From positions 1 through 44,651 of the forward strand of contig NW_021834862.1 of NCBI RefSeq assembly GCF_006345805.1: 44,651 bases of DNA, read 5' to 3'. Positions within the stretch are counted from its first letter, which is position 1, and each line of letters starts with the position of its first letter. The position numbers and the translations under genes were made by a program. Under the pieces are notes generated by a model that was not told the DNA's origin, ran no database searches, and was given only the letters and a program-made list of their open reading frames with translations. Shown piece after piece: positions 4,820-44,651 of the stretch. The DNA is from Octopus sinensis. Lineage: Eukaryota.

Positions 4820-4974
4820 GTTAATCCTCGAAATGAATATGGTCAAACACTGCTGCACTGGGCCTGTTATTGGGGATCCTTGCACACTGTCGAGCTGTTG
4901 TTGGGTCACAATGGCATCGATGCCAATGTGGTTGCCAACAATGGAGACACACCACTGCATGAGGCAGTTCGGGG
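4820..4974 (+). CDS. Ankyrin/RING gene exon (VNPRNEYGQTLLHWAC...GDTPLHEAVRG)
   Basis: CTTTATCAG acceptor ending 4819 and GTAAGT donor at 4975. Two ankyrin motifs. Phase 0 to 2. Confidence 0.93.
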
Positions 4975-8446: not shown

Positions 8447-8483
8447 TTGCAAGTATGAAGTGGTGTCTGTGATGCTGTCCAAG
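8447..8483 (+). CDS. Ankyrin/RING gene exon ((G)CKYEVVSVMLSK)
   Basis: Long pyrimidine tract plus CAG ending 8446 and GTTAGT donor at 8484. Phase 2 to 0 fits both neighbouring exons and ankyrin helix 2. Confidence 0.82.
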
Positions 8484-19466: not shown

Positions 19467-19514
<48 letters not shown>

Positions 19515-19515
<1 letters not shown>

Positions 19516-19755: not shown

Positions 19756-19805
<50 letters not shown>

Positions 19806-19894
19806 GTCTGTCTGTCTCTCTATTCTCTCTCTCTGTCTATCTATCTATCTATCTATCTATCTGTCTGCCTCTCTCTCTCTCTCTCTCTGTATCC

Positions 19895-19946
<52 letters not shown>

Positions 19947-20123
19947 GTCTGTCTGTCTCTCTATCTCTCTCTCTGTCTCTCTATCTATCTATCTATCTAT
20001 CTGTCTATCTATCTATCTATCTATCTGTCTGTCTGTCTGTCTCTCTATCTCTCTCTCTGTCTATCTATCTATCTATCTATCTGTCTATCTATCTGTCTGT
20101 CTGTCTCTCTATATCTCTCTCTG

Positions 20124-23151: not shown

Positions 23152-23361
23152 GGTTCACTTCAGTTGGACATTAAGAACAAAATGGAAAGGACACCATTGC
23201 TTGAAGCCGTTTCCCAGGGTCACCTCGGAATGACACACCTGTTAATAGCCCTGGGTGCAAATGTAAATGCTGTTGATGGTGAAGGTAACAGTTGTTTGCA
23301 CCTAGCCATGGCAACAAAACATTTTAATTCCAAGGGTGCACCCTTGGATTTACTAAACGAA
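23152..23361 (+). CDS. Ankyrin/RING gene exon (GSLQLDIKNKMERTPLLEAVS...GNSCLHLA...LDLLNE)
   Basis: Pyrimidine tract plus AAG acceptor ending 23151 and GTAAGT donor at 23362. This start keeps 34-aa ankyrin spacing. Phase 0 to 0. Confidence 0.88.
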
Positions 23362-25016: not shown

Positions 25017-25192
25017 TGCTGTACTGCCCTTAACCTGAAAAAGAAGGAAATACTCTCTGGTATAGTGGTTGCGAGATATCTCGCCAGCCAGGGAGCGGAC
25101 TTTCACCATAAAAACAACAACAATAACACACCATTGGACCTCATTAAGGACCCAAATTTGAGAAGAAAATTAGAAGCATTTTTACCACCACA
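25017..25192 (+). CDS. Ankyrin/RING gene exon (CCTALNLKKKE...YLASQGADFHHKNNNNNTPLDLIKD...FLPP)
   Basis: TTTGTAG acceptor ending 25016 and GTAAGT donor at 25193. Open frame with a terminal ankyrin-like GAD...TPLDL motif. Phase 0 to 2. Confidence 0.9.
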
Positions 25193-27296: not shown

Positions 27297-27436
27297 ATGT
27301 TTGTTGTGCAGAAATAAAGAGGCCACAACAAAAGTTCATCCCTGTGAACACCTTCTGACATGTGAAGAATGTTCAAACGTTCCACTTAAACGATGCCTGA
27401 GGTGTTTGAAACCTGTAACAAGCAGAGGTCGAGTTG
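27297..27436 (+). CDS. C3HC4 RING-finger exon (CLLC...PCEHLLTCEEC...CLRC)
   Basis: GTCCACAG acceptor ending 27296 and GTAAG donor at 27437. Spacing C-x2-C-x11-C-x-H-x3-C-x2-C-x7-C-x2-C as in MIB/IAP-type RINGs. Phase 2 to 1. Confidence 0.93.
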
Positions 27437-28515
27437 GTAAGAATATTCTTTGCTGATCTGTCTGTTTGTCCTGCTTGTCCCATTGCCCTTATTGTGTAGA
27501 ATAATATACTTCATGTTGTTATGTAGACAGAGGTCTGCCATAATCTGGCAGATTTATGATAAAAGGTGTTCCTAGTGTCTGTTCTCTGTAATAGTATATC
27601 TCTCACACTACATCCACTAAACATTGATTTTATCCAAGTAGGAAACATGTCACACTTCAAGAGGGTTGTAGTCTGCAACATAAAAATAATGGAGGATTCT
27701 GCAAGATACTTAGTGAGTAACTGAAGTATCAATAAATCTCCATCAACTCTATAATTAATTATGAGTTATTAGAAGATAATTAAATACAACAGTACTTACA
27801 AGGACATCAGTGTCATCTTTGGTAAAGTATTAAAATTAGTAGAATATTTTAAAGGAGTAAAATTATATGTCACTAGTTTGAGAGACTTTAACACACAATT
27901 CCATGTTGTTATGTTTGTAATTGGAGGATATTAAGGCTAATAGAGACAGTTTTGTTTGTCAAGCAACCAGATCATGAAACCTTCAAATATATCCTGAATG
28001 AGGTGACATTCTGGTGAACTGTGAAGTTAAAATTAGGGATTATCAGCAACAATGTTTAACAAAAAGATTAGGTGTATGTATTACCTTCTTGAAGTGGTTG
28101 TGACATGTGTTTGTTGTTATATCTTTGATGAATAAATATGTTGACACTGGAATTAAACAGGTTGTTAGTGAAGATCAGGGTTTTGAGAATACATTTAGGG
28201 TCATAGATATAAGCAAGGAAACCAAAACCTACAGATTAACTGTTATTATGTGATATAATTACAGCATTGTTAGATTATGTAGGATATCTTAACAGAAAGA
28301 GGAAATTTACAAAGATCAACTAGAGTCGTATTGGAGCTAAATATTGGCTATTACATGGGTCCACTGTTGAAAGTATAAAAATTGACCAAAAGCATTATGA
28401 TCGCTGGTTGGCCATTGATGATATGAATGTCTCTCAATAATAAAATATAGATTATTAATAAATATGAAGAAATTGTGCTATAAATAACTATAAAACTTGG
28501 AAACACATATTTCAG

Positions 28516-28595
28516 AGAGTCCAAAGTTTGAAGAGAAGGGAATGCAGACTGTGGCAGAGACAGTTGATGAGTTTAAAATTAGAGATCTTAATTAA
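28516..28595 (+). CDS. Diverged exon X0 ((E)SPKFEEKGMQTVAETV); homologous donor reads ATGAGT, so it may read through to TAA
   Basis: TTTCAG acceptor ending 28515 is in phase with the RING exon. The position equivalent to the GT donor (28567) is AT. Read-through gives DEFKIRDLN*. Confidence 0.55.
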
Positions 28596-29270
28596 TTTCT
28601 ATAGATTTTACATTCACCTAAGCTATTTTGCTTATTAGAATGGTGGAGAACAGATCCCATTTCTAATTTCCATTTGAAAGTTTAGCTCTAAAGTAATTGT
28701 ATTAAAAATATTACTGAAATTTCATAAAGTCATGTTTAACATGTTTGGTAAAATGGATAAATTAAAAGCCACAATAGAGTTAATATTGTCTTCTATGGAA
28801 CTATAATTTATGTTTTTTAGGTGTAAACTCGTGAGTTAATAAAATAGTTGTTTGTTTTTCTACTAAGATTTTTCGTAAGTTTTCTGATAGGTTATTCTTG
28901 ATGTTGTTATGTAGCCAGATGTCTGTCGTAATATTTTGTATTTTCTGGGGTTGTGTACCCTCAATGTCTCTGGTTAGAATACATTTTGTAGTTGTAAATT
29001 AGAAAATTCTAATTAAATGTTAACTCTGTATAAGAATATTCATCATGAACTTAATTTTATTAAATGTTAAATTAAATATTGAACCATGAACATCTGTTTA
29101 TATTTAAACAAATTATTGGTGTTTATACAAAATATACAATCAGAAATTGAATTTGACTTGAATACACAAATCCTTCTTTGTAACTATATATAATATACAC
29201 TTATTACATTGTTTGAACAACATTTACCATCCATATAGTCATTCTTTTTCTCACTCTTGTTAGATTTTAG

Positions 29271-29305
29271 ATGATATTAATGCTAAAAGAGGCACGGTTT
29301 TCTGA
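29271..29305 (+). CDS. Candidate terminal exon Y0 ((D)DINAKRGTVF*)
   Basis: Pyrimidine tract plus TTTTAG acceptor ending 29270. Phase-1 entry gives 11 codons then TGA. Confidence 0.5.
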
Positions 29306-29995
29306 GTGTTTCACCCTTTGGTCTTGATTGTTGCGTTCAAATTATTTAATGAAAGATAGTCATTGTTATTTGACCAGGAAATGAATTAATCATTAGTATT
29401 TGGCAGTGGACTTGGTTATATCTTTCTTCGTTTGCTCATGGAACTACCATAATATTAGCTGTGCTGAGACACAATCATATTCATAGTAATGAAGGTTATA
29501 TGTTCTTTACTCAGATTATATACAATCTATATTGATATCTAGTATTGCACCGTCAAGCACAGTGCCATTGTATCACATATATACCCAATTATCATGATAA
29601 TTAATAAGCTATAATTCATTAACTCTCTTACATTTGTATGTATGAAATGTTAACATATTTTGTCATAGGAACATCGTGTACCCTCACATTACATTTTATA
29701 TCTTGTTAGGGATCATGTTGGGGAAGGGTGTATGGAATTTGGCTTGTGGAGATGTTTTTTAGGGGACAGATTGTGTGCGGGTTGGAGGGTATGCATATAA
29801 AGGACATGTCTTTATGGGTGCAGTTTTACTTAATTAGAGAGGAATGTTGATTAGTGAATTCTAGATATGAGAGGACAGTGCCATGCCATAGATTTGGCAG
29901 TTATAAGAAAAGAAAGACAATGCTAAGAGAAAACTGTCATCAAGTGTTAATTAAATGAGATAATTGCAACATTGTTAGAATATTTAATGTGTTTT

Positions 29996-30032
<37 letters not shown>

Positions 30033-30252
30033 GGTGGATTTAGAAATGTTAGTCTGTTTTATTGTGGACATATTGAGCTACTACATGGGACCACTGTAGA
30101 AAGTACAGAAATATTGACCAAAACCATAGTGGTCAACATTTGACCATTAACGACAGGAATTGAATGTCTCACAATAAAAAGATAGAGTTTAATAAAAATA
30201 AAGATAAAGAAATTTTATTATTAAATGTAAAACTTGGAAATATTTATTTCAG

Positions 30253-30330
30253 AGGCTCCAAAGTTTGAAGACAGGTGTGTACAAACAGAGGCTATATGTC
30301 AGGAATTAGGGGCTGCATCTCAGGCAATTG
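30253..30330 (+). CDS. Repeated 78-nt phase 1-1 exon X1 (APKFEDRCVQTEAICQELGAASQAI)
   Basis: TATTTATTTCAG acceptor, GTGAGT donor at 30331, no stop, length divisible by 3. Confidence 0.72.
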
Positions 30331-30582
30331 GTGAGTATAAAATAATAGTTCCCAATTGATTTCTGTAAGGTTTTCTTCCCCCGAGTATATTGTGCTCGAA
30401 AGAATAACTGGAAACAGCTTCCATTCCTATTTTCCAATTGAACGATTATCTGTATAATAATTGAATTAAAGATATCGATTTACTGAGAGTTTATGAAAGA
30501 CCCATTGAGGTTAATGCTGTTGGTAATAATGTTCAAATTAGAAGACACAATAGAGTTAATTTTGTCATTTGGTCACGGAACT

Positions 30583-30994
30583 CATCATCATCATCATCAC
30601 ATCATTATCATTCTCCTCCTCATCATCATCGTTTAACGTCCGTTTTATAGTAGCATGGGTCGGACGATTTCACTGGCAAGGCAGTAGGCTGCGCCAGGCT
30701 CCAATGTGATCTGGCAAGGTTTCCACATATGTATGCCATTCCTAATGCCAACCACTCCGAGAGTGTGGTGGGTGCCTTTTACGTGCCACCGACACAGGAG
30801 CCAGCCGGTGTGGGGGCTGGCATCGACCACATTCGGATGGTGCTTTTTACGTACCACCTGCACAGGGAACCAGTCAGGCGGAATGGTAACAAACCACGCT
30901 TGAATGGTACTTATACGTGTCATCGGCACGGGTGTCAGTCAGGCGGCACTGGCATCGGTCACAACTCCAATTTCCATTTTGATTTCGATCTTGA
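30583..30994 (-). mobile_element. RTE-type LINE 3' tail with (GAT)n end, unit 1; equivalents at 35718-36114, 38166-38555 and 43259-43656
   Basis: (CAT)n followed by TTTAACRTCCGTTT...ATGCCATTCCTAATGCCAACC. Contiguous with recognisable RTE coding sequence in the B units. Confidence 0.7.
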
Positions 30995-31780
30995 ATTGCT
31001 TTTGATTTTTCATTTCTCTTATTGCCTGGTAGACTATGATGAAAACGAGGGGTTTAGGAATGATCCCTAGTGAACTCCTACTTCTATCCGGAATTCTTCA
31101 CTATACTCATTGCCGATCCTCACCTTACTACAGGGCCTCTTCAACTCTTATAATCGCTCGTCAATCCCTAGTTTCCACATTAGCTGTAAAAAGGATTCTA
31201 TTAAATATTCCACTGAAATTTCATAAAATCAAGGTTAACGTGGTTGGTAAAATGGATAAATAAGAAGACATAATAGAGTTAATGATGTCTTTTAGGACAG
31301 AGAACTAAAACATTTCGTTGTTTATTTGTAAACAGGTGAGTTAACGAGAAAGATTTTGTTTCTTTTACTACTAAGGTCTTTCCAAAGTTTTCTCATAGGT
31401 TATTGTTGTTGTTATTGTTATGTAGCCAGATGTCTGTCAGGATACGTTGTTTAGGTACGTACCCTGAATGTCTCATGTCAGAATAACTTTGTTATAAATT
31501 AAAGAAATTAAAAATCAAATCTCTAAGTTTGTAAGTATAATGATCATTAACGTTGATTAAATATTAAATTTAGTATTGAACGGTGAACATCTGTGTGCAT
31601 TTAAACAAAACATTGGTGTTGACATAAGATATAAAGATAGGAATTAAATATGAGTTCCCTGTGTGACTTGAACTCACAAATCCTTGTTTGTAACTATATA
31701 TAATATACACTTATTACATTGTTTGAACAACATTTACCATCCATATAGTCATTCTTTTTCTCACACTTGTTAGATTTTAG

Positions 31781-31815
31781 ATGATATTAATGCTAAAAGA
31801 GGCCCAGTTTTCTGA
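31781..31815 (+). CDS. Candidate terminal exon Y1 ((D)DINAKRGPVF*)
   Basis: Same acceptor context and TGA as Y0. Confidence 0.45.
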
Positions 31816-32731
31816 ATGTTTCACCCTTTGGTCTTGATTGTTGCGTTCAAATTATTTAATGAAAGATAGTCATTGTTATTTGACCAGGAAATGAATTAAT
31901 CATTAGTATTTGGCAGTGGACTTGGTTATATCTTTCTTCGTTTGCTCATGGAACTACCATAATATTAGCTGTGCTGAGACACAATCATATTCATAGTAAT
32001 GAAGGCTATATGTTCTTTACTCAGATTATATACAATCTATATTGATATCTAGTATTGCACCGTCAAGCACAGTGCCATTGTATCACATATATACCCAATT
32101 ATCATGATAACTAATAAGCTATAATTCATTAACTCTCTTACATTTGTATGTATGAAATGTAAATTTTATTTTCATAGGGATCGTGTACCCTCACCTAACA
32201 TCTTATATTTGTAGGGATCATGTTGTGGAGATGATTTTCAGGGGACAGATTGTCTGTGGGATGGAGCGTATGCACATAAAGGACATCTTTATGACCTCCG
32301 TTTTACTTAATTAGAGAGAATGTTGATTAGTGAATTCTAGAGATGAGAGGACTGTGCCATGCCATAGATTTGGCACAGTTATAAGAAAAGAAAGACAATG
32401 CTAAGAGAAAACTCTTATCAAGTGTTAATTAAATGAGATAATTGCAACATTGTTAGAATATTTAATGTGTTTTTAAAGAGAGAGGGAGAGAGAGAGAGAG
32501 ACAGAAGTGAGGGTGGATTTAGAAATGTTAGTCTCTTTTATTGTGGACATATTGGGCTATTACATGGGACCACTGTAGAAAGTACAGAAATATTGACCAA
32601 AACCATAGTGGTCAACATTTGACCATTAACGACAGAAATTGAATGTCTCACAATAACAAGATAGAGTTTAATAAAAATAAAGATAAAGAAAGTTTCTTTT
32701 TAAATTTAAGACTTGGAAATATTTATTTCAG

Positions 32732-32809
32732 GGGCTCTAAAGTGTGAGGACAGGTGTGTACAAACAGAGGCTACATGTCTGGAATTAGGGGCTGCATCTC
32801 AGGCAATAG
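32732..32809 (+). CDS. Repeated exon X2 (ALKCEDRCVQTEATCLELGAASQAI)
   Basis: Intact AG and GTGAGT, 78 nt, open frame. Confidence 0.68.
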
Positions 32810-33061
32810 GTGAGTATAAAATAATAGTTCCCAATTGATTTCTGTAAGGTTTTCTTCCCCCGAGTATATTGTGCTTGAAAGAATAACTGAAAACAGCTTC
32901 CATTCCTATTTTCCAATTGAACGATTATCTGTATAATAATTGAATTAAAGATATCGATTTACTGAGAGTTTATGAAATACCCATTGAGGTTAATGCTGTT
33001 GGTAATAATGTTCAAATTAGAAGACACAATAGAGTTAATTTTGTCATTTGGTCACAGAACT

Positions 33062-33905
33062 CATCATCATCATCATCATCATCATCATTATCATTTAACA
33101 TCCGTTTCTTATGGCGGCATGGGTCGGACGATTTCACTGGCAAGGCAGTAGGCTGCGTCAGGCTGCAATGTGATCTGGCAAGGTTTCCACATATGTATGC
33201 CATTCCTAACGCCAACCACTCCGAGAGTGTGGTGGGTGCTTTTTACGTGCCACCGACACAGGAGCCAGTTGAAGTTGGGGCTGGCATCGACGACGTTCGG
33301 AAGGTGCTTTTTACGTGCCACTTGCACAGGGAACCAGTCAGGCGGCACTGGCAACAAACAATGTTTGAATGGTACTTATTACGTGCCACCGGCATGGGTG
33401 CCAGCCAGGCGGCACTGGCATCGGCCGTAATTACAATTTCCATTTTGATTTCGATCTTGATTTGATTTTGATTTGTGATTTCTGGTTTTTGGTTTTACTT
33501 GACTCAGAAATTCTTCTCAAGCGCAACTTATCACTCTGTGATTCAAGGGTACTTTTAAAAAGGGCTGGTTATGCAACACTGGTATATGCTACAGCTCTGA
33601 TCTCACTTCACTTGCCGGGTCCTCTTAATCACGTCATATTTACAGAGGTCCCTGTCTCTTGCCATTACCTCTGTGAGGCCCAACATTCGAAGGTCGTTTC
33701 ACCACGTCATCCCCTGTCTTCCTGGGTCACTCCTTTGCACGGGTTCCTTCCACTGTTAGGGTGTAACACTTCTTCCCACAGCTCTCCTCATCCATACACA
33801 TGACCATACCAGTGCAGTTGTCTCTCTTGTACACCACATCTGATGCTCTTATGTCTAACACTTCTCTCCGGCCTCTTCACTCTGCCTTGTGTACACACTG
33901 ACATC
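33062..33905 (-). mobile_element. Longer RTE-type LINE 3' fragment, B unit
   Basis: The minus strand encodes, with frameshifts, SIRCGVQERQLHWYGHV / MDEESCGKKCYTLTVEG / DLRMLGLTEVMARDRDL, followed by a 3'UTR and (GAT)n tail. Confidence 0.75.
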
Positions 33906-34155
33906 GTTGCGTTCAAATTATTTAATGGAAGTTAGTCATTGTTATTTGACCAGGAAATGAATTAATCATTAGTATTTGGCAGTGGACTTGGTTATATCTT
34001 TCTTCGTTTGCTCATGGAACTACCATAATATTAGCTGTGCTGAGACACAATCATATTCATTGTAATGAAGGCTATATGTTCTTTACTCAGATTATATACA
34101 ATCTATATTGATATCTAGTATTGCACCGTCAAGCACTGTGCCATTGTATCACATA

Positions 34156-34725
34156 CACTTGCGTCGGCAATTAATTAGCACGTCTCAAATTTCTACATTT
34201 TCTTACATTTTCTTAATTTAATTAACTTATTATCAGAAACGAACTCGTTTTTAATCAAAAATTTATTAAAACATATCCCAGCACACCACATAATTGATAT
34301 TAATCGTGAAATTTAGTCAATATCTTGTTGCTCCTCCTTTGGCAGCAATGACAGCTGCTACGCGGGTCGGCATGCTGTCTATGAGTGCCTGCAGGTACTG
34401 TGCAGGGATGGCCCCTCATGCAGCAAGAAGTGCCCCAAACAGCTCGTGTCGGTTCCTGTATTGCTGCACATTCAAATCCCTACCCAATCGACTCCAGAGG
34501 TTCTCAATAGGGTTCAGGTCAGGTGACTGGCCAGCACGTACTCCTCGCCACCAAAGAGGTATCCCGTACTATCTCAACGTACTTTGCTGCGTTGATGTTG
34601 CCTTCGACGGCATAGAGCCGCCCAACACAACTGTAGCTGAACGCCCCTCACACCATCAGACCACCCCCACCATGCTTCATGGTGAGCAAATCAAGGGTGG
34701 TGCTAATTAATTTCTGACGGTAGTG
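34156..34725 (-). mobile_element. Internally deleted Tc1-family DNA transposon with TIRs and TA target duplication
   Basis: 26-bp imperfect TIRs at 34156-34181 and 34700-34725, flanked by TA. The minus strand reads QSPDLNPIENLW...SMPTRVAAVIAAKGGATRY* with one internal TGA. The empty site is present in A units. Confidence 0.92.
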
Positions 34726-35118
34726 TATATACCCAATTATCATGATAATTAATAAGCTATAATTCATTAACTCTCTTACATTTGTATGTCTGAAATGTAA
34801 ACTTATTTTGTCATAGGAACATCGTGTACCCTCACCTTACATTTTACAACTTGTTAGGGATCATGTTGTGGAGATGATTTTCAGAGGACAGATTGTGTGC
34901 GGGGTGGAGGGTATGCACATAAAGGACAGTCTTTATGACCTCAGTTTTACTTAATTAGAGAGGAATGTTGATTAGTGAATTCTAGAGATGAGAGGACAGT
35001 GCCATGCCATAGATTTGGCATAGTTATAAGAAAAGAAAGACAAAGCTAAGAGAAAACTCTTATCAAGTGTTAATTAAATGAGATAATTAGTACGTTGTTA
35101 GAATATTTAATGTGTTTC

Positions 35119-35172
<54 letters not shown>

Positions 35173-35389
35173 GAATTTAGGAATGTTAGTCTGTTTTATT
35201 GTGGACATATTGGGCTATTACATGGGACCACTGTAGAAAGTACAGAAATATTGACCAAAACCATAGTGGTCAACATTTGACCAGTAACGACAGGAATTGA
35301 ATGTCTCACAATAACAAGATAGAGTTTAATAAAAATAAAGATAAAGAAAGTTTCTTTTTAAATGTAAAACTTGGAAATATTTATTTCAG

Positions 35390-35467
35390 GGGCTCCAAAG
35401 TTTGAAGACAGGTGTGTACAAACAGAGGCTACATGTCAGGAATTAGGGGCTGCATCTCAGGCAATTG
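35390..35467 (+). CDS. Repeated exon X3 (APKFEDRCVQTEATCQELGAASQAI)
   Basis: Intact AG and GTGAGT, 78 nt, open frame. Confidence 0.68.
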
Positions 35468-35716
35468 GTGAGTATAAAATAATAGTTCCCAATTGATTTC
35501 TGTAAGGTTTTCTTCCCCCGAGTATATTGTGCTTGAAAGAATAACTGAAAACCGCTTCCATTCCTATTTTCCAATTGAACAATTATCTGTATAATAATTG
35601 TATTAAAGATATCGATTTACTGTGAGTTTATGAAATACCCATTGAGGTTAATGCTGTTGGTAATAATGTTCAAATTAGAAGACACAATAGAGTTAATTTT
35701 GTCATTTGGACAGAAC

Positions 35717-35750
<34 letters not shown>

Positions 35751-36892
35751 TTAACATCCTTTTTTTATCGTGGCATGGGTCGGACGATTTCACTGGCAAG
35801 GCAGTAGGCTGCGCCAGGCTCAATGTGATCTGGCAAGGTTCCACATATGTATGCCATTCCTAATGCCAACCACTCCGAGAGTGTGGTGGGTGCCTTTTAC
35901 GTGCCACCGACACAGGAGCCAGCCGGGGTGGGGGCTGGCATCGACCACGTTCGGATGGTGCTTTTTACGTGCCAGCGGCACAGGGAACTAGTCAGGCGGC
36001 AGTGACAAGGACCTATGCTTCTATGGTACTTATAACGTGCCACAGGAACAGGTGCCAGTCAGGCGGCACTGGCATCGGTCACAACTACAATTTCCATTTT
36101 GATTTCGATCTTGAATTGCTTTTGATTTGTCATTTCTGTTATTGCATGGTGGACTATGATGAAAACGAGGGGTTTAGGAATGATCCCTAGTGAACTCCTA
36201 CTTCTATCCGGAATTCTTCACTATACTCATTGCCAATCCTCACCTTACTACAGGGCCTCTTCAACTCTTATAATCGCTCGTCAATCCCTAGTTTCCGCAT
36301 TAGCTGTAAAAAGGATTCTATTAAATATTCCACTGAAATTTCATAAAATCAAGGTTAACGTGGTTGGTAAAATGGATGAATAAGAAGACATAATAGAGTT
36401 AATGATGTCTTTTAGGACAGAGAACTAAAATAGTTTGTTGTTTATTTGTAAACAGGTGAGTTACCGAGAAAGATTTTGTTTCTTTTGCTACTAAGGTATT
36501 TCCTAAGTTTTCTGATAGGTTATTGTTGTTGTTATGTAGCCAGATGTCTGTCAGGATATGTTGTTTAGGTACGTACCCTAAATGTCTCATGTCAGAATAA
36601 CTTTGTTATAAATTAAAGAAATTAAAAATCAAATCTCTAAGATTGTAAGTATAATGATCATTAACGTTGATTAAATATTAAATTTAGTATTGAACGGTGA
36701 ACATGTTTACATTCAAACAAAATATTGGTGTTGACATAAAATATAAAGAGAGGAATTAAATATGAGTTCCCTGTGTGACTTGATCTCACAAATCCTTGTT
36801 TGTAATTATATATAGTATACACTTATTACATTGTTTGAACAACATTTACCATCCATATAGTCATTCTTTTTCTCACAAATGTTAGATTTTAG

Positions 36893-36927
36893 ATGATATT
36901 AAAGCTAAAAGAGGCACAGTTTTCTGA
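36893..36927 (+). CDS. Candidate terminal exon Y3 ((D)DIKAKRGTVF*)
   Basis: Same acceptor context and TGA as Y0. Confidence 0.42.
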
Positions 36928-37835
36928 GTGTTTCACCCTTTGGTCTTGATTGTTGCGTTCAAATTATTTAATGAAAGATAGTCATTGTTATTTGACCAGG
37001 AAATGAATTAATCATTAGTATTTGGCAGTGGACTTGGTTATATCTTTCTTCGTTTGCTCATGGAACTACCATAATATTAGCTGTGCTGAGACACAATCAT
37101 ATTCATTGTAATGAAGGTTATATGTTCTTTACTCAGATTATATACAATCTATATTGATATCTAGTATTGCACCGTCAAGCACAGTGCCATTGTATCACAT
37201 ATATACCCAATTATCATGATAATTAATAAGCTATAATTCATTAACTCTCTTACATTGTATGTATGAAATGTAAATTTTTTGTCATAGGGACATCGTGTAC
37301 CCTCACCTAACATTTATATCTTGTTAGGGATCATGTTGTGGAGATGATTTTTAGGGGACAGATTGTGTGTGGGATGGAGCGTATGCACATAAAGGACATC
37401 TTTATGACCTCAGTTTTACTTAATTAAAGAAGAATGTTGATTAGTGAATTCTAGAGATGAGAGGACTGTGCCATGCCATAGATTTGGCACAGTTATAAGA
37501 AAAGAAAGACAAAGCTAAGAGAAAACTCTTACCAAGTGTTAATTAAATGAGATAATTGGTACGTTGTTAGAATATTTTATGTGTTTCTAGAGAGAGAGAG
37601 AGAGAGAGAAGTAAGGGTGGATTTAGAAATGTTAGTCTGTTTTATTGTGGACATATTGGGCTATTACATGGGACCCCTGTAGAAAGTACGGAAATATTGA
37701 CCAAAACCATAATGGTCAACATTTGACCAGTAACAACAGAAATTGAATGTCTCACAATAACAAGATAGAGTTTAATAAAAATAAAGATAAAGAAAGTTTC
37801 TTTTTAAATGTAAAACTTGGAAATATTTATTTCAG

Positions 37836-37913
37836 GGGCTCCAAAGTTTGAGGACAGGTGTGTACAAACAGAGGCTACATGTCAGGAATTAGGGGCTGCA
37901 TCTCAGGCAATTG
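37836..37913 (+). CDS. Repeated exon X4 (APKFEDRCVQTEATCQELGAASQAI)
   Basis: Intact AG and GTGAGT, 78 nt, open frame. Confidence 0.68.
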
Positions 37914-39333
37914 GTGAGTATAAAATAATAGTTCCCAATTGATTTCTGTAAGGTTTTCTTCCCCCGAGTATATTGTGCTTGAAAGAATAACTGAAAACAG
38001 CTTCCATTCCTATTTTCCAATTGAACAATTATCTGTATAATAATTGTATTAAAGATATCGATTTACTGTGAGTTTATGAAATACCCATTGAGGTTAATGC
38101 TGTTGGTAATAATGTTTAAATTAGAAGACACAATAGAGTTAATTTTGTCATTTGGTCACAGAACTCATCATCATCATCATCATCATCATTTAACATCCGT
38201 TTCTTATCGTGGCATGGGTCGGACGATTTCACTGGCAAGGCAGTCGGCTGCGCCAGGCTCCAATGTGATCTGGCAAGGTTTCCACATATGTATGCCATTC
38301 CTAATGCCAACCACCTCGAGAGTGTGGTGGGTGCCTTTTACGAGCCACCGGCACAGGAGTCAGTCGGGGTGGGGGCTGGCATCGACCACATTTGGGTGGT
38401 GCTTTTTACGTGCCAGCGGCACAGGGAACCAGTCAGGCGGCAGTGACAAGGACCTATGCTTCTATGGTACTTATAACGTGACACAGGAACAGGTGCCAGT
38501 CAGGCGGCACTGGCATCGGTCACAACTACAATTTCCATTTTGATTTCGATCTTGAATTGCTTTTGATTTGTCATTTCTCTATTGCCTGGTGGACTATGAT
38601 GAAAACGAGGGGTTTAGGAATGATCCTATTGAACTCCTACTTCTATCCGGAAATCTTCACTATACTCATTGCCGATCCTCACCTTACTACAGGGCCTCTT
38701 CAACTCTTATAATCGCTCGTCAATCCCTAGTTTCCGCATTAGCTGTAAAAAGGATTCTATTAAATATTCCACTGAAATTTCATAAAATCAAGGTTAACGT
38801 GGTTGGTAAAATGGATAAATAAGAATACATAATAGAGTTAATGATGTCTTTTAGGACAGAGAACTAAAACATTTTGTTGTTTATTTGTAAACAGGTGAGT
38901 TAACGAGAAAGTTTTTGTTTCTTTTACTACTAAGGTCTTTCCAAAGTTTTCTGATAGGTTATTGTTGTTGTTATTGTTATGTAGCCAGATGTCTGTCAGG
39001 ATATGTTGTTTAGGTACGTACCCTGAATGTCTCAGGTCAGAATAACTTTGTTATAAATTAAATAAATTAAAAATCAAATCTCTAAGATTGTAAGTATAAT
39101 GATCATTAACGTTGATTAAATATTAAATTTACTATTGAACGGTGAACATGTTTACATTTAAGCAAAATATTGGTGTTGACATAAAATATAAAGAAAAGAA
39201 TTAAATATGAGTCCCCTGTGTGACTTGAACTCACAAATCCTTGTTTGTAACTATATATAATATACACTTATTACATTGTTTGAACAACATTTACCATCCA
39301 TATAGTCTTCTTTTCACTCTTCTTAGATTTTAG

Positions 39334-39368
39334 ATGATATTAATGCTAAAAGAGGCACAGTTTTCTGA
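39334..39368 (+). CDS. Candidate terminal exon Y4 ((D)DINAKRGTVF*)
   Basis: Same acceptor context and TGA as Y0. Confidence 0.42.
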
Positions 39369-40290
39369 GTGTTTAACCCTTTGGTCTTGATTGTTGCGTT
39401 CAAATTATTTAATGAAAGATAGTCATTGTTATTTGACCAGGAAATGAATTAATCATTATTATTTGGCAGTGGACTTGGTTATATCTTTCTTCGTTTGCTC
39501 ATGGAACTACCATAATATTAGCTGTGCTGAGACACAATCATATTCATAGTAATGAAGGTTATATGTTCTTTACTCAGATTATATACAATCTATATTGATA
39601 TCAAGTATTGCACCGTCAAGCACAGTGCCATTGTATCACATATATACCCAATTATCTCGATAACTAATAAGCTATAATTCATTAACTCTCTTACATTTGT
39701 ATGTATGAAATGTAAATTTATTTTGTCATAGGGACATCGTGTACCCTCACCTAACATCTTATATCTTGTTAGGGATCATGTTGTGGAGATGATTTTTAGG
39801 GGACAGATTGTGTGTGGGATGGAGCGTATGCACGTAAAGGACATCTTTATGACCTCAGTTTTACTTAATTAGAGAAGAATGTTGATTAGTGAATTCTAGA
39901 GATGAGAGGACTGTGCCATGCCATAGATTTGGCACAGTTATAAGAAAAGAAAGACAAAGCTAAGAGGAAACTCTTATCAAGTGTTAATTAAATGAGATAA
40001 TTGCAACATTGTTAGAATATTTAATGTGTTTTTAAAGAGAGAGTGAGAGAGAGAGAGAGACAGAAGTGAGGGTGGATTTAGAAATGTTAGTCTCTTTTCT
40101 TGTGGACATATTGGGCTATTACATGGGACCACTGTAGAAAGTACAGAAATATTGACCAAAACCATAATGGTCAACATTTGACCATTAACGACAGAAATTG
40201 AATGTCTCACAATAACAAGATAGAGTTTAATAAAAATAAAGATAAAGAAAGTTTCTTTTTAAATGTAAAACTTGGAAATATTTATTTCAG

Positions 40291-40368
40291 GGGCTCCAAA
40301 GTGTGAGGACAGGTGTGTACAAACAGAGGCTACATGTCAGGAATTAGGGGCTGCATCTCAGGCAATAG
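40291..40368 (+). CDS. Repeated exon X5 (APKCEDRCVQTEATCQELGAASQAI)
   Basis: Intact AG and GTGAGT, 78 nt, open frame. Confidence 0.68.
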
Positions 40369-40619
40369 GTGAGTATAAAATAATAGTTCCCAATTGATTT
40401 CTGTAAGGTTTTCTTCCCCCGAGTATATTGTGCTTGAAAGAATAACTGAAAACAGCTTCCATTCCTATTTTCCAATTGAACAATTATCTGTATAATAATT
40501 GAATTAAAGATATCGATTTACTAAGATTTTTTGAAATACCCATTGAGGTTAATGCTGTTGGTAATAATGTTCAAATTAGAAGACACAATAGACTTAATTT
40601 TGTCATTTGGTCATGGAAC

Positions 40620-40620
<1 letters not shown>

Positions 40621-40656
<36 letters not shown>

Positions 40657-41460
40657 TTAACATCCGTTTCTTATGGCGGCATGGGTCGGACGATTTCACT
40701 GGCAAGGCAGTAGGCTGCGTCAGGCTGCAATGTGATCTGGCAAGGTTTCCACATATGTATGCCATTCCTAACGCCAACCACTCCGAGAGTGTGGTGGGTG
40801 CTTTTTACGTGCCACCGACACAGGAGCCAGTTGAAGTTGGGGCTGGCATCGACCACGTTCGGAAGGTGCTTTTTACGTGCCACCTGCACAGGGAACCAGT
40901 CAGGCGGCACTGGCAACAAACAATGTTTGAATGGTACTTATTATGTGCCATCGGCACGGGTGCCAGCCAGGCGGCACTGACATCGGCCATCATTACAATT
41001 TGCATTTTGATTTCGATCTTGATTGATTTTGATTTGTGATTTGGTTTTTTGTTTTACTTGACTCAGAAATTCTTCTAGCGCAACTTATCACTCTGTGATT
41101 CAAGGGTACTTTTAAAAAGGGCTGGTTATGCAACACTGGTATAGGCTACAGCTGTGATCTCACTTCACTTGCCGGGTCCTCTTAATCACGTCATTTACAG
41201 AGGTCCCTGTCTCTTGCCATTACCTCTGTGAGGCCCAACATTCGAAGGTCGTTTCACCACGTCATCCCCTGTCTTCCTGGGTCACTCCTTTCCACGGGTT
41301 CGTTCCACTGTTAGGGTGTAACACTTCTTCCCACAATTCTCCTCATCCATACCCATAACCATACCAGTGCAGTTGTCTCTCTTGTACACCACATCTGATG
41401 CTTCTTATGTCTAACACTTCTCTCCGGCCTCTTCACTCTGCCTTGTGTGCACACCGACAT
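40621..41460 (-). mobile_element. Longer RTE-type LINE 3' fragment, second B unit
   Basis: Near-identical to 33062-33905 with the same junction. Confidence 0.75.
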
Positions 41461-41708
41461 CGTTGCATTCAAATTATTTAATAGAATATAGTCATTGTTA
41501 TTTGACCAGGAAATGAATAATCATTAGTATTTGGCAGTGGACTTGGTATATCTTTCTTCGTTGCTCATGGAACTACCATAATATTAGCTGTGCTGAGACA
41601 CAATCATATTCATAGTAATGAAGGTTATATGTTCTTTACTCAGATTATATACAATCTATATTGATATCTAGTATTGCACCGTCAAGCACAGTGCCATTCT
41701 ATCACATA

Positions 41709-42273
41709 CACTTGCGTCGGAAATTAATTAGCACTTCTCAAATTTCTACATTTTCTTACATTTTCTTAATTTAATTAACTTATTATCAGAAACGAACTTG
41801 TTTTTAATCAAAAATTTATTAAAACATATCCCAGCACACCACATAATTGATATTAATCGTGAAATTTAGTCAATATCTTGTTGCTCCTCCTTTGGCAGCA
41901 ATGACAGCTGCTACGCGGGTCGGCATGCTGTCTATGAGTGCCTGCAGGTACTGTGCAGGGATGGCCCCTCATGCAGCAAGAAGTGCCCCAAACAGCTCGT
42001 GTCGGTTCCTGTATTGCTGCACATTCAAATCCCTACCCAATCGACTCCAGAGGTTTTCAATAGGGTTCAGGTCAGGTGACTGGCCAGCACGTACTCCTCG
42101 CCACCAAAGAGGTATCCCGTACTATCTCAAAGTACTTTGCTGCGTTGATGTTGCCTTGACGGATAGAGCCGCCCAACACAACTGTAGCTGAACGCCCCTC
42201 ACACCATCAGACCACCCCCACCATGCTTCATGGTGAGCAAATCAAGGGTGCTAATTAATTTCTGACGGTAGTG
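41709..42273 (-). mobile_element. Second copy of the Tc1 deletion derivative
   Basis: Same insertion site, TIRs and internal TGA as 34156-34725. Confidence 0.92.
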
Positions 42274-42929
42274 TATATACCCAATTATCATGATAATTAA
42301 TAAGCTATAATTCATTAACTCTCTTACATTTGTATGTCTGAAATGTAAACTTATTTTGCCATAGGAACATCGTGTACCCTCACCTTACATTTTATATCTT
42401 GTTAGGGATCATGTTGGGGAAGGGTGTATGGAATTTGGCTTGTGGAGATGATTTTTAGGGGACAGATTGTGTGCGGGGTGGAGGGTATGCACATAAAGGA
42501 CATGTCTTTATGGGCTCAGTTTCACTTAATTAGAGAGGAATGTTGATTAGTGAATTCTAGAGATGAGAGGACTGTGCCATGCCATAGATTTGGCAGTTAT
42601 AAGAAAAGAAAGACAATGCTAAGAGAAAACTGTCAAGTGTTAATTAAATGAGATAATTGCAACATTGTTAGAATATTTAATGTGTTCTTAGAGAGAGAGA
42701 GAGGGAGAGGGTGGATTTAGGAATGTTAGTCTGTTTTATTGTGGACATATTGAGCTATTACATGGGACCACTGTAGAAAGTACAGAAATATTGACCAAAA
42801 CCATAATGGTCAACATTTGACCATTAACGACAGGAATTGAATGTCTCACAATAACAAGATAGAGTTTAATAAAAATAAAGATAAAGAAAGTTTCTTTTTA
42901 AATGTAAAACTTGGAAATATTTATTTCAG

Positions 42930-43007
42930 GGGCTCCAAAGTTTGAAGACAGGTGTGTACAAACAGAGGCTACATGTCAGGAATTAGGGGCTGCATCTCAG
43001 GCAATTG
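42930..43007 (+). CDS. Repeated exon X6 (APKFEDRCVQTEATCQELGAASQAI)
   Basis: Intact AG and GTGAGT, 78 nt, open frame. Confidence 0.68.
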
Positions 43008-43257
43008 GTGAGTATAAAATAATAGTTCCCAATTGATTTCTGTAAGGTTTTCTTCCCCCGAGTATATTGTGCTTGAAAGAATAACTGAAAACAGCTTCCA
43101 TTCCTATTTTCCAATTGAACGATTATCTGTATAATAATTGAATTAAAGATATCGATTTACTGAGAGTTTATGAAATACCCATTGAGGTTAATGCTGTTGG
43201 TAATAATGTTCAAATTAGAAGACACAATAGAGTTAATTTTGTCATTGGTCACAGAAC

Positions 43258-43291
<34 letters not shown>

Positions 43292-44435
43292 AATCATTAA
43301 CCGTTTCTTATGGCGGCATGGGTCGGACGATTTCACTGGCAAGGCAGTAGGCTGCGCCAGGCTCCAATGTGACTGGCAAGGTTTCCACATATGTATGCCA
43401 TTCCTAATGCCAACCACTCCGAGAGTGTGGTGGGTGCTTTTTACGTGCCACCGACACAGGAGCCAGTCGGGGGGGGGCTGGCATCGACCACGTTCGGATG
43501 GTGCTTTTTACGTGCCAGCGGCACAGGGAACTAGTCAGGCGGCAGTGACAAGGACCTATGCTTCTATGGTACTTATAACGTGACACAGGAACAGGTGCCA
43601 GTCAGGCGGCACTGGCATCGGTCACAACTACAATTTCATTTTGATTTCGATCTTGAATTGCTTTTGATTTGTCATTTCTCTTATTGCCTGGTGGACTATG
43701 ATGAAAACGAGGGGTTTAGGAATGATCCCTAGTGAACTCCTACTTCTATCCGGAATTCTTCACTATACTCATTGCCGATCCTCACCTTACTACAGGGTCT
43801 TCAACTCTTATAATCGCTCGTCAATCCCTAGTTTCCGCATTAGCTGTAAAAAGGATTCTATTAAATATTCCACTGAAATTTCATAAAATCAAGGTTAACG
43901 TGGTTGGTAAAATGGTTAAATAAGAAGACATAATAGAGTTAATGATGTCTTTTAGGACAGAGAACTAAAACATTTTGTTGTTTATTTGTAAACAGGTGAG
44001 TTAACGAGAAAGATTTTGTTTCTTTTACTACTAAGGTCTTTCCTAAGTTTTCTCATAGGTTATTGTTGTTGTTGTTATGTAGCCAGATGTCTGTCATGAT
44101 ATGTTGTTTAGGTACGTACCCTGAATGTCTCAGGTCAGAATAACTTTGTTATAAATTAAAGAAATTAAAAATCAAATCTCTAAGATTATAAGTATAATGA
44201 TCATCAACGTTGATTAAATATCAAATTTAGTATTGAACGGTGAACATCTGTTTGCATTTAAACAAAATATTGGTGTTGACATAAATTATAAAGATAGGAA
44301 TTAAATATGAGTTCCCTGTGTGACTTGATCTCACAAATCCTTGTTTGTAATATATATATATACACTTATTACATTGTTTGAACAACATTTACCATCCATA
44401 TAGTCATTCTTTTTCTCACTCTTGTTAGATTTTAG

Positions 44436-44470
44436 ATGATATTAATGCTAAAAGAGGCACAGTTTTCTGA
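44436..44470 (+). CDS. Candidate terminal exon Y6 ((D)DINAKRGTVF*)
   Basis: Same acceptor context and TGA as Y0. Confidence 0.42.
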
Positions 44471-44651
44471 GTGTTCACCCTTTGGTCTTGATTCTTGCGT
44501 TCAAATTATTTAATGGAAGTTAGTCATTGTATTTGACCAGGAAATGAATTAGTCATTAGTATTTGGCAGTGGACTTGGTTATATCTTTCTTCGTTTGCTC
44601 ATGGAACTACCATAATATTAGCTGTGCTGAGACACATTCATATTCATAGTA

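What the first reader, a model, noticed from the sequence alone, without database searches (positions are those of the whole stretch)
30253..43007. A ~2.5-kb satellite-like array is a tandem amplification of a coding exon behind the RING domain
Seen: six 78-nt segments (30253, 32732, 35390, 37836, 40291, 42930), each with TATTTATTTCAG before and GTGAGT after. All are open and phase 1 to 1, matching the phase-1 donor of the RING exon (27436). All six splice-site pairs and frames are intact, although the surrounding units carry indels and transposon insertions. Inference: these symmetric exons could be spliced singly (alternative choice) or chained, giving the ligase a C-terminal tail of 1 to 6 or more 26-aa repeats whose length depends on splicing and array copy number. 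None appears in the ORF track, so automated annotation would likely mask the region as repeat.
Basis: partly seen in the sequence, partly recalled or inferred. Interest (0 to 1): 0.85.

Follow-up and report, generated by a model that had tools for sequence, protein, structure and literature searches.

The report
Amplified linker exon, octopus RING–Death gene
An octopus ubiquitin-ligase gene carries at least six tandem copies of a 78-base coding exon, itself an old copy of the first Death-domain exon, and gene models in sister species splice 0 to 4 such exons between the RING finger and a Death domain; this is a real and tidy case of a known kind, tandem exon duplication.

Summary
Six 78-nt segments with identical TATTTATTTCAG/GTGAGT borders sit in a 2.45-2.66-kb tandem array. 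They are open only in phase 1 and match the phase-1 donor of the RING exon (27436). A seventh, older 51-nt copy without a GT donor lies at 28516, and the array runs off the window end.

The gene belongs to an Octopus-specific ankyrin-RING-Death-domain family that databases name 'MIB2-like'. Annotated models in O. sinensis and O. vulgaris place this same 26-aa peptide after the RING, in 0, 1, 2, 3 or 4 copies, singly or chained. In most models a Death domain follows. So the exons form a variable spacer, not a terminal tail, and the Death-domain exons lie beyond the window, as in the O. sinensis orthologue.

New here:
- X, the 51-nt form and Death-domain exon 1 are paralogous, flanking intron included.
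- X units are about 93% identical between paralogues whose RING regions are only about 66% identical.
- The orthologue has 4 copies as assembled, against at least 6 here.

Within the array, the exon is no more conserved than its intron, so 'all six intact' is not evidence of selection. No transcript data were available for this locus. This is a new member of a known kind, of moderate interest.

The parts
4820..4974 (+). Ankyrin-repeat exon 1 seen in the window (VNPRNEYGQT...HEAVRG). Acceptor ag, donor gtaagt, ends in phase 2.
   Evidence: tblastn to P0001 at 81%; boundaries and frame; Pfam Ank families for the joined product.
8447..8483 (+). 37-nt mini-exon (CKYEVVSVMLSK) linking ankyrin exons 1 and 2.
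   Evidence: Orthologous exon in O. sinensis L001, where model P0003 starts MLKQ; frame closes.
23152..23361 (+). Ankyrin-repeat exon 2.
   Evidence: tblastn; boundaries; 86.7% identical to L001 against 97% for the upstream intron.
25017..25192 (+). Ankyrin-repeat exon 3 (CCTALNLKKKE...FLPPQ).
   Evidence: tblastn at 88% to P0008; boundaries.
27297..27436 (+). RING exon (zf-C3HC4_3), with a phase-1 donor G|GTAAGA. Reading through the donor gives GKNILC*.
   Evidence: Pfam PF13920; tblastn at 96% to P0008; read-through. O. bimaculoides model P0010 ends ...GKNTLC.
28341..30252 (+). Oldest, degenerate unit of the array (u0 unit), with unit positions 314-911 deleted.
   Evidence: blastn of unit 3: 28341-28515 at 73%, 28558-28790 at 69%, 28682-30252 at 85%.
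28516..28566 (+). u0, a 51-nt copy of the cassette exon. The acceptor is intact and the donor GT has become AT. The phase-1 reading ...ESPKFEEKGMQTVAETV continues as DEFKIRDLN*. It is a possible alternative last exon or a decaying pseudo-exon.
   Evidence: The O. sinensis orthologue has a 7-nt deletion here, yet model P0003 splices the RING exon to this acceptor. Paralogous 51-nt exons with working donors are seen in L004.
30253..30330 (+). X1 (E)APKFEDRCVQTEAICQELGAASQAI; unit type A, 30253-32731.
   Evidence: It carries the same 'AIC' variant as the first X of O. sinensis L002.
32732..32809 (+). X2 (G)ALKCEDRCVQTEATCLELGAASQAI; unit type B, 32732-35389.
35390..35467 (+). X3 (G)APKFEDRCVQTEATCQELGAASQAI; unit type A, 35390-37835.
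37836..37913 (+). X4; same peptide as X3, with one synonymous difference; unit type A, 37836-40290.
40291..40368 (+). X5 (G)APKCEDRCVQTEATCQELGAASQAI; unit type B, 40291-42929.
   Evidence: It is 100% identical to the second X of O. vulgaris P0008.
42930..43007 (+). X6; same as X3; unit type A, cut by the window end at 44651.
34156..34725 (.). 570-bp non-autonomous TIR element (TA target duplication, 29-nt terminal inverted repeats) inside unit 2.
   Evidence: Comparison with the empty site in a type A unit; inverted repeat I1; no Pfam hit for its ORF.
41709..42273 (.). The same TIR element in unit 5 (98% identical), so it was copied together with the unit.
   Evidence: O. sinensis unit s2 has the same type B length.
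33485..33902 (.). Type B segment replacing type A unit positions 750-1559. A second copy lies at 41044-41458.

Best explanation
The window holds the 3' half of a gene of an Octopus-specific ankyrin-repeat / RING (zf-C3HC4_3) / Death-domain family, which databases name 'MIB2-like'. Behind the RING exon lies a tandem array of units about 2.5 kb long. Each unit carries one symmetric (phase 1-1) 78-nt cassette exon, X, with strong and identical splice sites.

X is a diverged tandem copy of the gene's own first Death-domain exon, which encodes helix 1. The likely route is a 51-nt intermediate of which u0 (28516) is a relic, followed by a 27-nt in-frame gain. The true Death-domain exons follow the array beyond the window end.

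Because every X is symmetric, any number of copies can be spliced in without breaking the frame. The result is RING-(X)n-Death proteins with a spacer of n x 26 residues. Genomic copy number sets the upper limit and exon skipping sets the number actually used. Shorter products can end at the RING donor read-through, at u0, or by read-through after an X.

The array changes by unequal exchange: 4 units in the O. sinensis orthologue as assembled, against at least 6 here. It is kept alike between paralogous genes.

Inferred function: the Death domain docks the ligase into death-fold signalling assemblies, the fast-evolving ankyrin repeats pick targets, and the low-complexity, weakly helical X spacer sets the reach or geometry between RING and Death domain.

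Shown: the anatomy, the reading frames, the homology, and use of the exon in sister-species gene models. Inferred: use at this locus, and the function of the spacer.
For: Anatomy and frame.

Family and exon use: searches returned 50-odd Octopus proteins. X appears directly after the RING in 0 to 4 copies.
- P0028 has three X chained, and P0004, P0005 and P0006 from the same gene each carry a different single X.
- P0027 has three and P0031 two, from the locus L003, whose genome holds three.
- P0032 has four X followed by a Death domain.

Orthology: O. sinensis L001 is collinear with window 4563-29322 at 94-97%. L002 starts at the equivalent of 29967 (96.8%) and carries four X, then Death-domain exon 1 (11904-11975, same TATTTATTTCAG acceptor and GTGAGTATA donor) and exon 2.

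Death domain: Pfam PF00531 E = 4.6e-9; RIPK1 Death domain by sequence, E = 1.9e-4; by fold, TM 0.76 and rmsd 2.6 A.

Origin of X:
- X, u0 and Death-domain exon 1 align together with their intron flanks. Flanks are 65-79% identical and exon bodies only 51-67%.
- The match extends over a collinear 600 bp at 66-70%, E = 1e-40 to 1e-63.
- Exon lengths of 72, 78 and 51 nt are all multiples of three.
- The same flanks surround tandem 51-nt exons in paralogue L004.

Homogenisation: L003 X units are 92-93% identical to window units, while its RING region is 65.6% identical.

Spacer character: in the AlphaFold model of RING-2X-Death, the Death domain has pLDDT 80-87 and the X region 33-45 with weak helices. 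X matches no Pfam family.
Against: - No transcript or junction data could be examined for this locus, and the window does not reach the Death-domain exons.
- The sister-species evidence consists of automated gene models (Gnomon, and the OctVul6B pipeline, which mixes transcripts, protein alignments and ab initio predictions; PMC10700109). Near-identical X copies invite multi-mapping of junction reads, so some isoforms could be artefacts.
- Within the array the exon shows no excess conservation over the intron, so the recent copies may be neutral passengers.
- u0 shows that copies can lose their donor and decay.
- The proposed function of the spacer is inference only.
Confidence: 0.78

Rival explanations
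1. At this locus the X copies are unused or mostly unused passengers. The mRNA ends at the RING exon (donor read-through GKNILC*) or at u0 (…DEFKIRDLN*), and the array is neutral duplicated 3' flank.
For: O. bimaculoides model P0010 ends ...GKNTLC, the same read-through. The O. sinensis orthologue model P0003 splices the RING exon to u0, not to X. The exon is no more conserved than the intron within the array. AATAAA/ATTAAA signals follow the RING exon and u0.
Against: The second half of the O. sinensis orthologue (L002, P0032) is modelled as four chained X plus a Death domain. Its split into two 'partial' genes follows a contig break. Paralogues with the same array have models joining RING, X and Death domain. 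X splice sites are as good as or better than those of the constitutive exons. All 10 copies in two species, and 3 in a paralogue, keep frame and splice sites.
Confidence: 0.12
2. This is the first reader's version: the repeats form a C-terminal tail. Transcripts include one or more X and then end by read-through or polyadenylation in the following intron, giving ...AIGEYKIIVPN* with no Death domain.
For: O. vulgaris models P0002 and P0048 are RING + 2 X + GEYKIIVPN*. P0053 and P0054 end in the same way. The window gives the identical read-through peptide.
Against: Most models continue into a Death domain, as the orthologue does. Only one AATAAA/ATTAAA is found in the 770 bp after X1. Read-through ends are a common artefact of retained introns. 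This is best seen as a minor isoform class, not the main product.
Confidence: 0.15
3. The array works as a mutually exclusive exon cluster of the Dscam type. Exactly one X is chosen per transcript, giving sequence diversity rather than length diversity.
For: O. sinensis isoforms X6, X7 and X8 each carry a different single X. X copies differ at a few residues (F/C, T/I, P/L, Q/L). A weak 18-nt AT-rich inverted match lies between 28444-28461 and a site in each unit.
Against: Models with 2, 3 and 4 chained copies exist for the same genes. Symmetric phase means chaining is never penalised by a frameshift. Introns are long, so there is no steric exclusion. The copies are nearly identical, so there is little diversity to select. 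The inverted match is short, AT-rich and 83% complementary.
Confidence: 0.06
4. The array, or its copy number, is an assembly artefact that inflates one or two real units.
For: The O. sinensis assembly breaks exactly at the start of the array, which shows the region is hard to assemble. The pattern A-B-A-A-B-A could be a duplicated three-unit block.
Against: Units differ by 2.5-7% and come in two structural types, one with a transposon, unlike collapsed or duplicated reads. Pairs of units three apart are not clearly closer than other pairs of the same type. Arrays of 3 or 4 units are assembled independently in O. sinensis and O. vulgaris.
Confidence: 0.05

Closest known systems
Tandem exon duplication giving alternative or chained cassette exons (reviewed by Ivanov & Pervouchine 2022, PMC9013439; classic surveys by Kondrashov & Koonin 2001 and Letunic et al. 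2002, cited from my own knowledge)
   Same: Adjacent homologous exons with their intron flanks. Lengths are multiples of three, phases are symmetric, and splice sites are conserved. Isoforms differ in which or how many copies are included.
   Different: There are at least 6 very young copies (93-97% identical) in multi-kb units, instead of the usual old pair. Usage is not strictly mutually exclusive. The source exon encoded part of a folded domain (Death-domain helix 1), whereas the copies act as a spacer.
LPA kringle IV-2 coding repeat (multi-kb unit carrying exons, copy-number variable; from my own knowledge)
   Same: A kilobase-scale tandem unit containing in-frame exons, so genomic copy number sets protein length. 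Copy number changes quickly.
   Different: KIV-2 units encode a whole folded domain and are all included. Here the unit encodes 26 low-confidence residues, and skipping is annotated. Variation between individuals was not tested here.
Mind bomb E3 ligases MIB1/MIB2 (the database name of the relatives)
   Same: Ankyrin repeats followed by a C-terminal zf-C3HC4_3 RING.
   Different: No MIB/HERC2 or ZZ domains in full-length paralogue models. There is a single RING, and a Death domain is added. The family is 'MIB-like' by name only.
Death-fold adaptors whose inter-domain linker is changed by splicing, for example ASC and ASC-b (Bryan et al. 2010, PMC2887861)
   Same: Alternative splicing alters the linker next to a death-fold domain, and the isoforms behave differently as adaptors.
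   Different: The ASC linker is one fixed segment that is present or absent. Here it is a countable array of duplicated exons, and the partner domain is a RING rather than a second death-fold domain.
RING plus death-fold ligases: cIAP1/2 (BIR-CARD-RING; from my own knowledge) and mollusc IAPs with Death domain and RING (Witkop et al. 2022, PMC8917759)
   Same: The same RING subtype combined with a death-fold domain in proteins of cell-death and immune pathways. These families are lineage-specifically expanded in molluscs.
   Different: No BIR domains. The order is RING then Death domain. Ankyrin repeats serve as the N-terminal module. That paper reports IAPs as least expanded in Octopus.
Dscam1-type mutually exclusive exon clusters
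   Same: Long arrays of tandemly duplicated alternative exons.
   Different: Exclusivity is not met, because chained models exist. No convincing docking or selector pairing was found.

Membership tests
Tandem exon duplication (cassette array) | Neighbouring exons of one gene are homologous, flanking intron included. | tested here: met
   Six units are 93-97.5% identical. u0 and Death-domain exon 1 are homologous with their flanks.
Tandem exon duplication (cassette array) | Copies keep the reading frame (length a multiple of three, same phase at both ends) and their splice signals. | tested here: met
   78 nt, phase 1-1, cag|...|GTGAGT in all six copies. Related forms are 51 and 72 nt. The exception is u0, whose donor is lost.
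Tandem exon duplication (cassette array) | Copies are included in mature transcripts. | not testable with these tools
   No RNA data were available for this locus. Indirect evidence comes from sister-species gene models with 1-4 X.
Mutually exclusive exon cluster (Dscam type) | One and only one exon of the cluster is included per transcript. | tested here: not met
   Annotated models chain 2, 3 or 4 copies (P0008, P0027-P0029, P0032).
Mutually exclusive exon cluster (Dscam type) | Competing docking and selector RNA pairings. | tested here: inconclusive
   Only an 18-nt, AT-rich match with 83% complementarity was found.
Mind bomb (MIB1/MIB2) | N-terminal MIB/HERC2 and ZZ domains. | tested here: not met
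   Absent from paralogue models P0028, P0048 and P0050, the last two starting at a methionine upstream of the ankyrin repeats. The 5' end of the window's own gene lies outside the window.
Mind bomb (MIB1/MIB2) | Ankyrin repeats followed by C-terminal zf-C3HC4_3 RING(s). | tested here: met
   Pfam Ank families at E = 1e-18 to 5e-20, and PF13920 at 27.2 bits against a cutoff of 27, for the product joined from the window.
Death-domain superfamily | A six-helix Death domain recognisable by profile and by fold. | tested here: met
   Tested on the orthologue and paralogues, not on the window. PF00531 E = 4.6e-9; RIPK1 Death domain E = 1.9e-4; Foldseek hits to RIPK1, FADD and TNFR1 Death domains, TM up to 0.76. 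The window has no Death-domain exon.
Satellite DNA | Head-to-tail tandem units. | tested here: met
Satellite DNA | Non-coding sequence in long homogeneous arrays, independent of genes. | tested here: not met
   Each unit carries a coding exon. Arrays of 3-6 units sit at the same place, between RING and Death domain, in paralogous genes.
Copy-number-variable coding repeat (LPA KIV-2-like) | Unit number differs between individuals or close species. | tested here: inconclusive
   4 units in O. sinensis as assembled against at least 6 here. However, the O. sinensis assembly breaks at the array, and no population data were available.

The most novel reading that the evidence does not exclude
The X array is a concertedly evolving, copy-number-variable exon module shared by a chromosomal cluster of fast-evolving ankyrin-RING-Death genes. 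Genomic copy number and regulated exon skipping together act as an adjustable ruler. The ruler sets the distance between the ubiquitin-transfer module and the Death-domain docking site, and so tunes which components of octopus death-fold (RIPK1/FADD/TNFR1-like) signalling complexes are ubiquitinated. This would be a length-coded layer of innate-immune or cell-death regulation, born from a duplicated piece of the Death domain itself.
Probability: 0.15. Interest if true: 0.65.

Novelty: new member of a known kind. Interest (0 to 1): 0.4.

Why it matters
This is a very young and easily read example of how tandem exon duplication builds new protein segments. An exon that once encoded helix 1 of a Death domain was copied and lost its fold role. 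It now serves as a countable spacer whose length can change by unequal crossing-over and by splicing.

The example sits in a lineage-specific ligase family that I found described in no paper. That family links ubiquitination to death-fold signalling in cephalopods, and its ankyrin exons evolve faster than its introns.

In practice, the finding warns annotators that this 2.5-kb 'repeat' must not be masked. It also warns that short-read junction mapping in such arrays is ambiguous. Finally, it offers a natural series (n = 0 to at least 6) for testing how linker length affects a RING-Death ligase.

Tried and rejected
1. Variable sites are 11/78 in the exon against 85/588 in the flanks (p = 1). 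None of the 18 splice-motif columns varies. The exon has 0 indels against 21 events in the flanks, but those cluster in (AG)n and (TCA)n tracts. Omega is about 0.5 from 7 nonsynonymous and 4 synonymous changes. The test is not informative.

2. Three-unit block duplication (A-B-A twice). Units three apart are 96.6-97.6% identical, and other pairs of the same type 96.3-97.2%. This is not decisive.

3. A Death-domain exon inside the window. None was found.

4. Docking/selector RNA pairing. Only a weak AT-rich 18-mer was found.

5. A known protein family for the X peptide. There was only a sub-threshold PCF11_RFEG_rpt hit (26.9 bits against a cutoff of 43), which I rejected. ORFs inside the units have no Pfam match.

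6. tRNA-derived SINE heads. None were found.

7. Six of ten exact-product look-ups found nothing (P0008, P0002, P0004, P0007, P0009, P0028), so the O. sinensis gene with isoforms X1 and X6-X8 could not be inspected at the DNA level.

8. L004 could not be read in scripts, so it was examined only by pattern search and alignment.

9. The AlphaFold model is shallow (28 sequences, all Octopus). Only the Death-domain part is trustworthy, and the RING part is poor.

10. Literature searches for this family found nothing.

11. The species of the window was not pinned down. It is 94-97% identical to O. sinensis across non-coding DNA, and no database protein is identical to the window's product.

Full report
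OBSERVATION

The motif TATTTATTTCAG occurs exactly six times in the window, all on the + strand, ending at 30252, 32731, 35389, 37835, 40290 and 42929. Shuffles give 0.65 on average. Each motif is followed by 78 nt and then GTGAGTATAAAA. Only the frame that corresponds to phase 1 is open; the other two frames contain stops in every copy. Spacings are 2479, 2658, 2446, 2455 and 2639 bp.

A self-comparison shows a head-to-tail array of units 93-97.5% identical. The array begins with an older, partly deleted unit near 28341 and is cut by the window end. So the description is accurate, and six is a minimum. Aligning the exon neighbourhoods revealed a seventh copy at 28516-28566. It has the same acceptor context but is 27 nt shorter (51 nt), and its donor GT has mutated to AT.

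THE GENE

Stop-to-stop ORFs and tblastn found the upstream exons. Splice borders were read directly from the sequence. The exons are:
- ankyrin exon 4820-4974
- 37-nt mini-exon 8447-8483
- ankyrin exons 23152-23361 and 25017-25192
- RING exon 27297-27436

Joined with X1-X6 these exons give one open frame. Pfam finds ankyrin repeats and zf-C3HC4_3.

Three shorter endings are possible:
- read-through of the RING donor (GKNILC*)
- splicing to u0 (...ESPKFEEKGMQTVAETVDEFKIRDLN*)
- read-through after an X (...AIGEYKIIVPN*)

RELATIVES

The closest proteins are all from Octopus (O. sinensis, O. vulgaris, O. bimaculoides), are named MIB1/MIB2-like, and are 83-88% identical at best. Their sequences settle what X is. 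The peptide (E/G)APKFEDRCVQTEATCQELGAASQAI follows the RING directly, with the junction residues the window predicts. In most models it is followed by SPVLKE(R/K)DLLRVAKRLG..., a Death domain.

The Death-domain assignment rests on three results:
- Pfam PF00531, E = 4.6e-9
- RIPK1 Death domain by sequence, E = 1.9e-4
- RIPK1, FADD and TNFR1 Death domains by fold, TM up to 0.76

Copy number in the models runs from 0 to 4:
- 0 copies: P0034, P0037, P0040
- 1 copy: P0004, P0005, P0006, P0050
- 2 copies: P0008, P0030, P0031, P0033
- 3 copies: P0027, P0028, P0029
- 4 copies: P0032

In one O. sinensis gene, isoform X1 chains three copies, while X6, X7 and X8 each carry a different single copy. P0002 and P0048 end by read-through after two X (GEYKIIVPN*). 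O. bimaculoides P0010 ends with the RING read-through (GKNTLC).

Full-length paralogue models have no MIB/HERC2 or ZZ domain. The family is therefore ankyrin-RING-(X)n-Death and 'Mind bomb' only in name.

ORTHOLOGUE

O. sinensis contig L001 is collinear with window 4563-29322 at 94-97% identity and stops where the array begins. Contig L002 starts at the equivalent of window 29967 (96.8%). Its first X has the same 'AIC' variant as window X1. It carries four X exons (283, 2365, 5005, 7104), then a 72-nt exon at 11904 and a last exon at 14327-14533. Together these two encode the Death domain.

The window contains no Death-domain exon, as expected if it simply ends too early. As assembled, O. sinensis has 4 units and the window at least 6. 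The unit types also differ: the window reads A-B-A-A-B-A, while O. sinensis has type B units with and without the transposon. This points to turnover by unequal exchange. The caveat is that the O. sinensis assembly breaks at the array.

ORIGIN OF X

Death-domain exon 1 in L002 has the same acceptor (TATTTATTTCAG) and donor (GTGAGTATA) as X. An alignment of Death-domain exon 1, X and u0 shows that the intron flanks are homologous (65-79% identity), while the exon bodies are only 51-67% identical.

In the O. vulgaris paralogue L003 the segment around Death-domain exon 1 matches X and u0 units over about 600 bp at 66-70%, with E = 1e-40 to 1e-63. At the protein level, SPKFEEKGMQTVAE (u0) lines up with SPVLKEKDLLRVAK (Death-domain exon 1).

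A further paralogue (L004) has tandem 51-nt exons, three copies about 2 kb apart and two copies 858 bp apart. They have the same flanks and working GT donors.

X is therefore a diverged tandem copy of the exon encoding Death-domain helix 1. The 51-nt form is probably the intermediate, and X has gained 27 nt in frame. Part of that gain looks like an imperfect internal 21-nt repeat. Every length change in the exon is a multiple of three (72, 51, 78), whereas flank indels are of arbitrary length. This is the long-term signal that the exon is read as coding.

CONCERTED EVOLUTION

L003 has a different RING. The DNA around its RING exon is 65.6% identical to the window and its ankyrin region 73.9%. 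Yet its three X units are 92-93% identical to the window's, as close as units within one array. The array is therefore either homogenised between paralogues or was spread recently as a module. Many paralogues lie on one 12-Mb O. vulgaris contig.

IS INTACTNESS EVIDENCE OF SELECTION?

Results:
- Variable sites are 11/78 in the exon against 85/588 in the flanks (Fisher p = 1).
- None of the 18 splice-motif columns varies, where about 2.6 would be expected at the flank rate.
- There are no indels in the exon against 21 events in the flanks, but those are concentrated in two microsatellite tracts.
- There are 7 nonsynonymous and 4 synonymous changes, giving omega of about 0.5, which is not significant.

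At this level of divergence the intact state of the six copies is roughly what neutrality would give. The case for function rests on the paralogues and the gene models, not on the array itself.

HOW IT PROBABLY WORKS

All X exons are symmetric and have identical strong splice sites. Any subset can therefore be included without changing the frame. Genomic copy number sets the maximum spacer length, and exon skipping sets the length actually made.

The AlphaFold model of a RING-2X-Death paralogue gives a confident Death domain (pLDDT 80-87). The X region is of low confidence (33-45), with one weak helix per repeat. That fits a flexible or loosely helical spacer derived from a helix-coding exon.

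By analogy, the linker next to a death-fold domain is changed by splicing in ASC, with functional consequences (PMC2887861). RING plus death-fold combinations also occur in IAPs, including mollusc forms with Death domain and RING (PMC8917759). On that basis I infer three roles:
- The Death domain recruits the ligase to death-fold complexes.
- The ankyrin repeats bind targets.
- The spacer sets reach or geometry.

This functional part is inference only.

COMPARISON AND NOVELTY

Tandem exon duplication that produces alternative or chained exons is a well-described kind (PMC9013439). A kilobase-scale coding repeat whose copy number sets protein length recalls LPA KIV-2 (from my own knowledge). 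The exons are already present in automated annotations of sister species.

As far as I could find, the following have not been described: the family itself, the derivation of its spacer from the Death-domain exon, the homogenisation across paralogues, and the difference between species. I rate this a new member of a known kind, of moderate interest.

LIMITS

- There are no RNA data for this locus.
- The gene models may suffer from multi-mapping among near-identical exons.
- The O. vulgaris submitter annotation mixes transcript, protein and ab initio evidence (PMC10700109).
- The window's species was not identified.
- Copy numbers depend on assemblies.

Noticed in passing
window 4820-4974, 8447-8483, 23152-23361 against L001: Ankyrin exons differ more from the O. 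sinensis orthologue than the introns beside them do: 85-89% against 95-97%. For ANK1, pN/pS is 2.4. For ANK2, synonymous divergence is also raised and continues into the downstream intron, which suggests conversion from a paralogue. The RING exon is 98.6% identical. The target-binding module appears to be evolving fast.
   Followed up: partly
window 9351-20098: A 10.7-kb block is absent from the O. sinensis orthologue. It contains one full-length non-LTR retrotransposon, with an endonuclease-like ORF at 13957-14818 and a reverse-transcriptase ORF at 14791-17205 (Pfam RVT_1, E = 3.4e-30). It also holds two 3' fragments (about 9806-11120 and 18143-18885), each followed by (TATC)n/(TCTA)n tracts. 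It is a lineage-specific insertion in the long intron.
   Followed up: partly
window 11-893, 1293-2411, 5606-7984: Very long simple repeats: an AG-rich tract with higher-order periods of 162-186 nt, (ATG)n of 1.1 kb, and (GAT)n of 2.4 kb. The (GAT)n tract is missing from the orthologous O. sinensis contig.
   Followed up: no
L003 16438-23373 against window 29029-44651: X-array units of an O. vulgaris paralogue with a quite different RING (DNA about 66% identical) are 92-93% identical to the window's units. In that paralogue the array starts only about 200 bp after the RING exon, with no u0-type unit. This suggests gene conversion or recent module transfer between paralogues.
   Followed up: partly
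L004 7842-12018 and 14508-15415: Another O. sinensis paralogue has its own tandem arrays of the 51-nt form of the exon: three copies about 2 kb apart and two copies 858 bp apart. All have the same flanking splice context, so amplification of this cassette has happened repeatedly in the family.
   Followed up: partly
proteins P0011, P0019, P0043 (paralogues): Some annotated isoforms skip Death-domain exon 1 as well. It too is a symmetric 72-nt exon. These isoforms join the RING directly to Death-domain exon 2, which would give a Death domain lacking helix 1, possibly an inactive or regulatory form.
   Followed up: no
window 28444-28461 against 29516-29533, 32026-32043, 34092-34109: An 18-nt AT-rich sequence just upstream of the u0 acceptor is 83% complementary to a site present once in each array unit. 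It is too weak to call a docking/selector pair.
   Followed up: no
L001 8125-8612 against window 26477-25988: The O. sinensis orthologue carries an inverted copy, about 490 bp long, of intron sequence that occurs once in the window. It is a small structural difference in the intron before the RING exon.
   Followed up: no
window 28516-28566 against L001 10894-10938: The u0 exon differs between the two species by a 7-nt indel that shifts the frame, and both lack a GT donor. The O. sinensis gene model nevertheless uses its acceptor. u0 may be a decaying exon that still traps splicing.
   Followed up: partly
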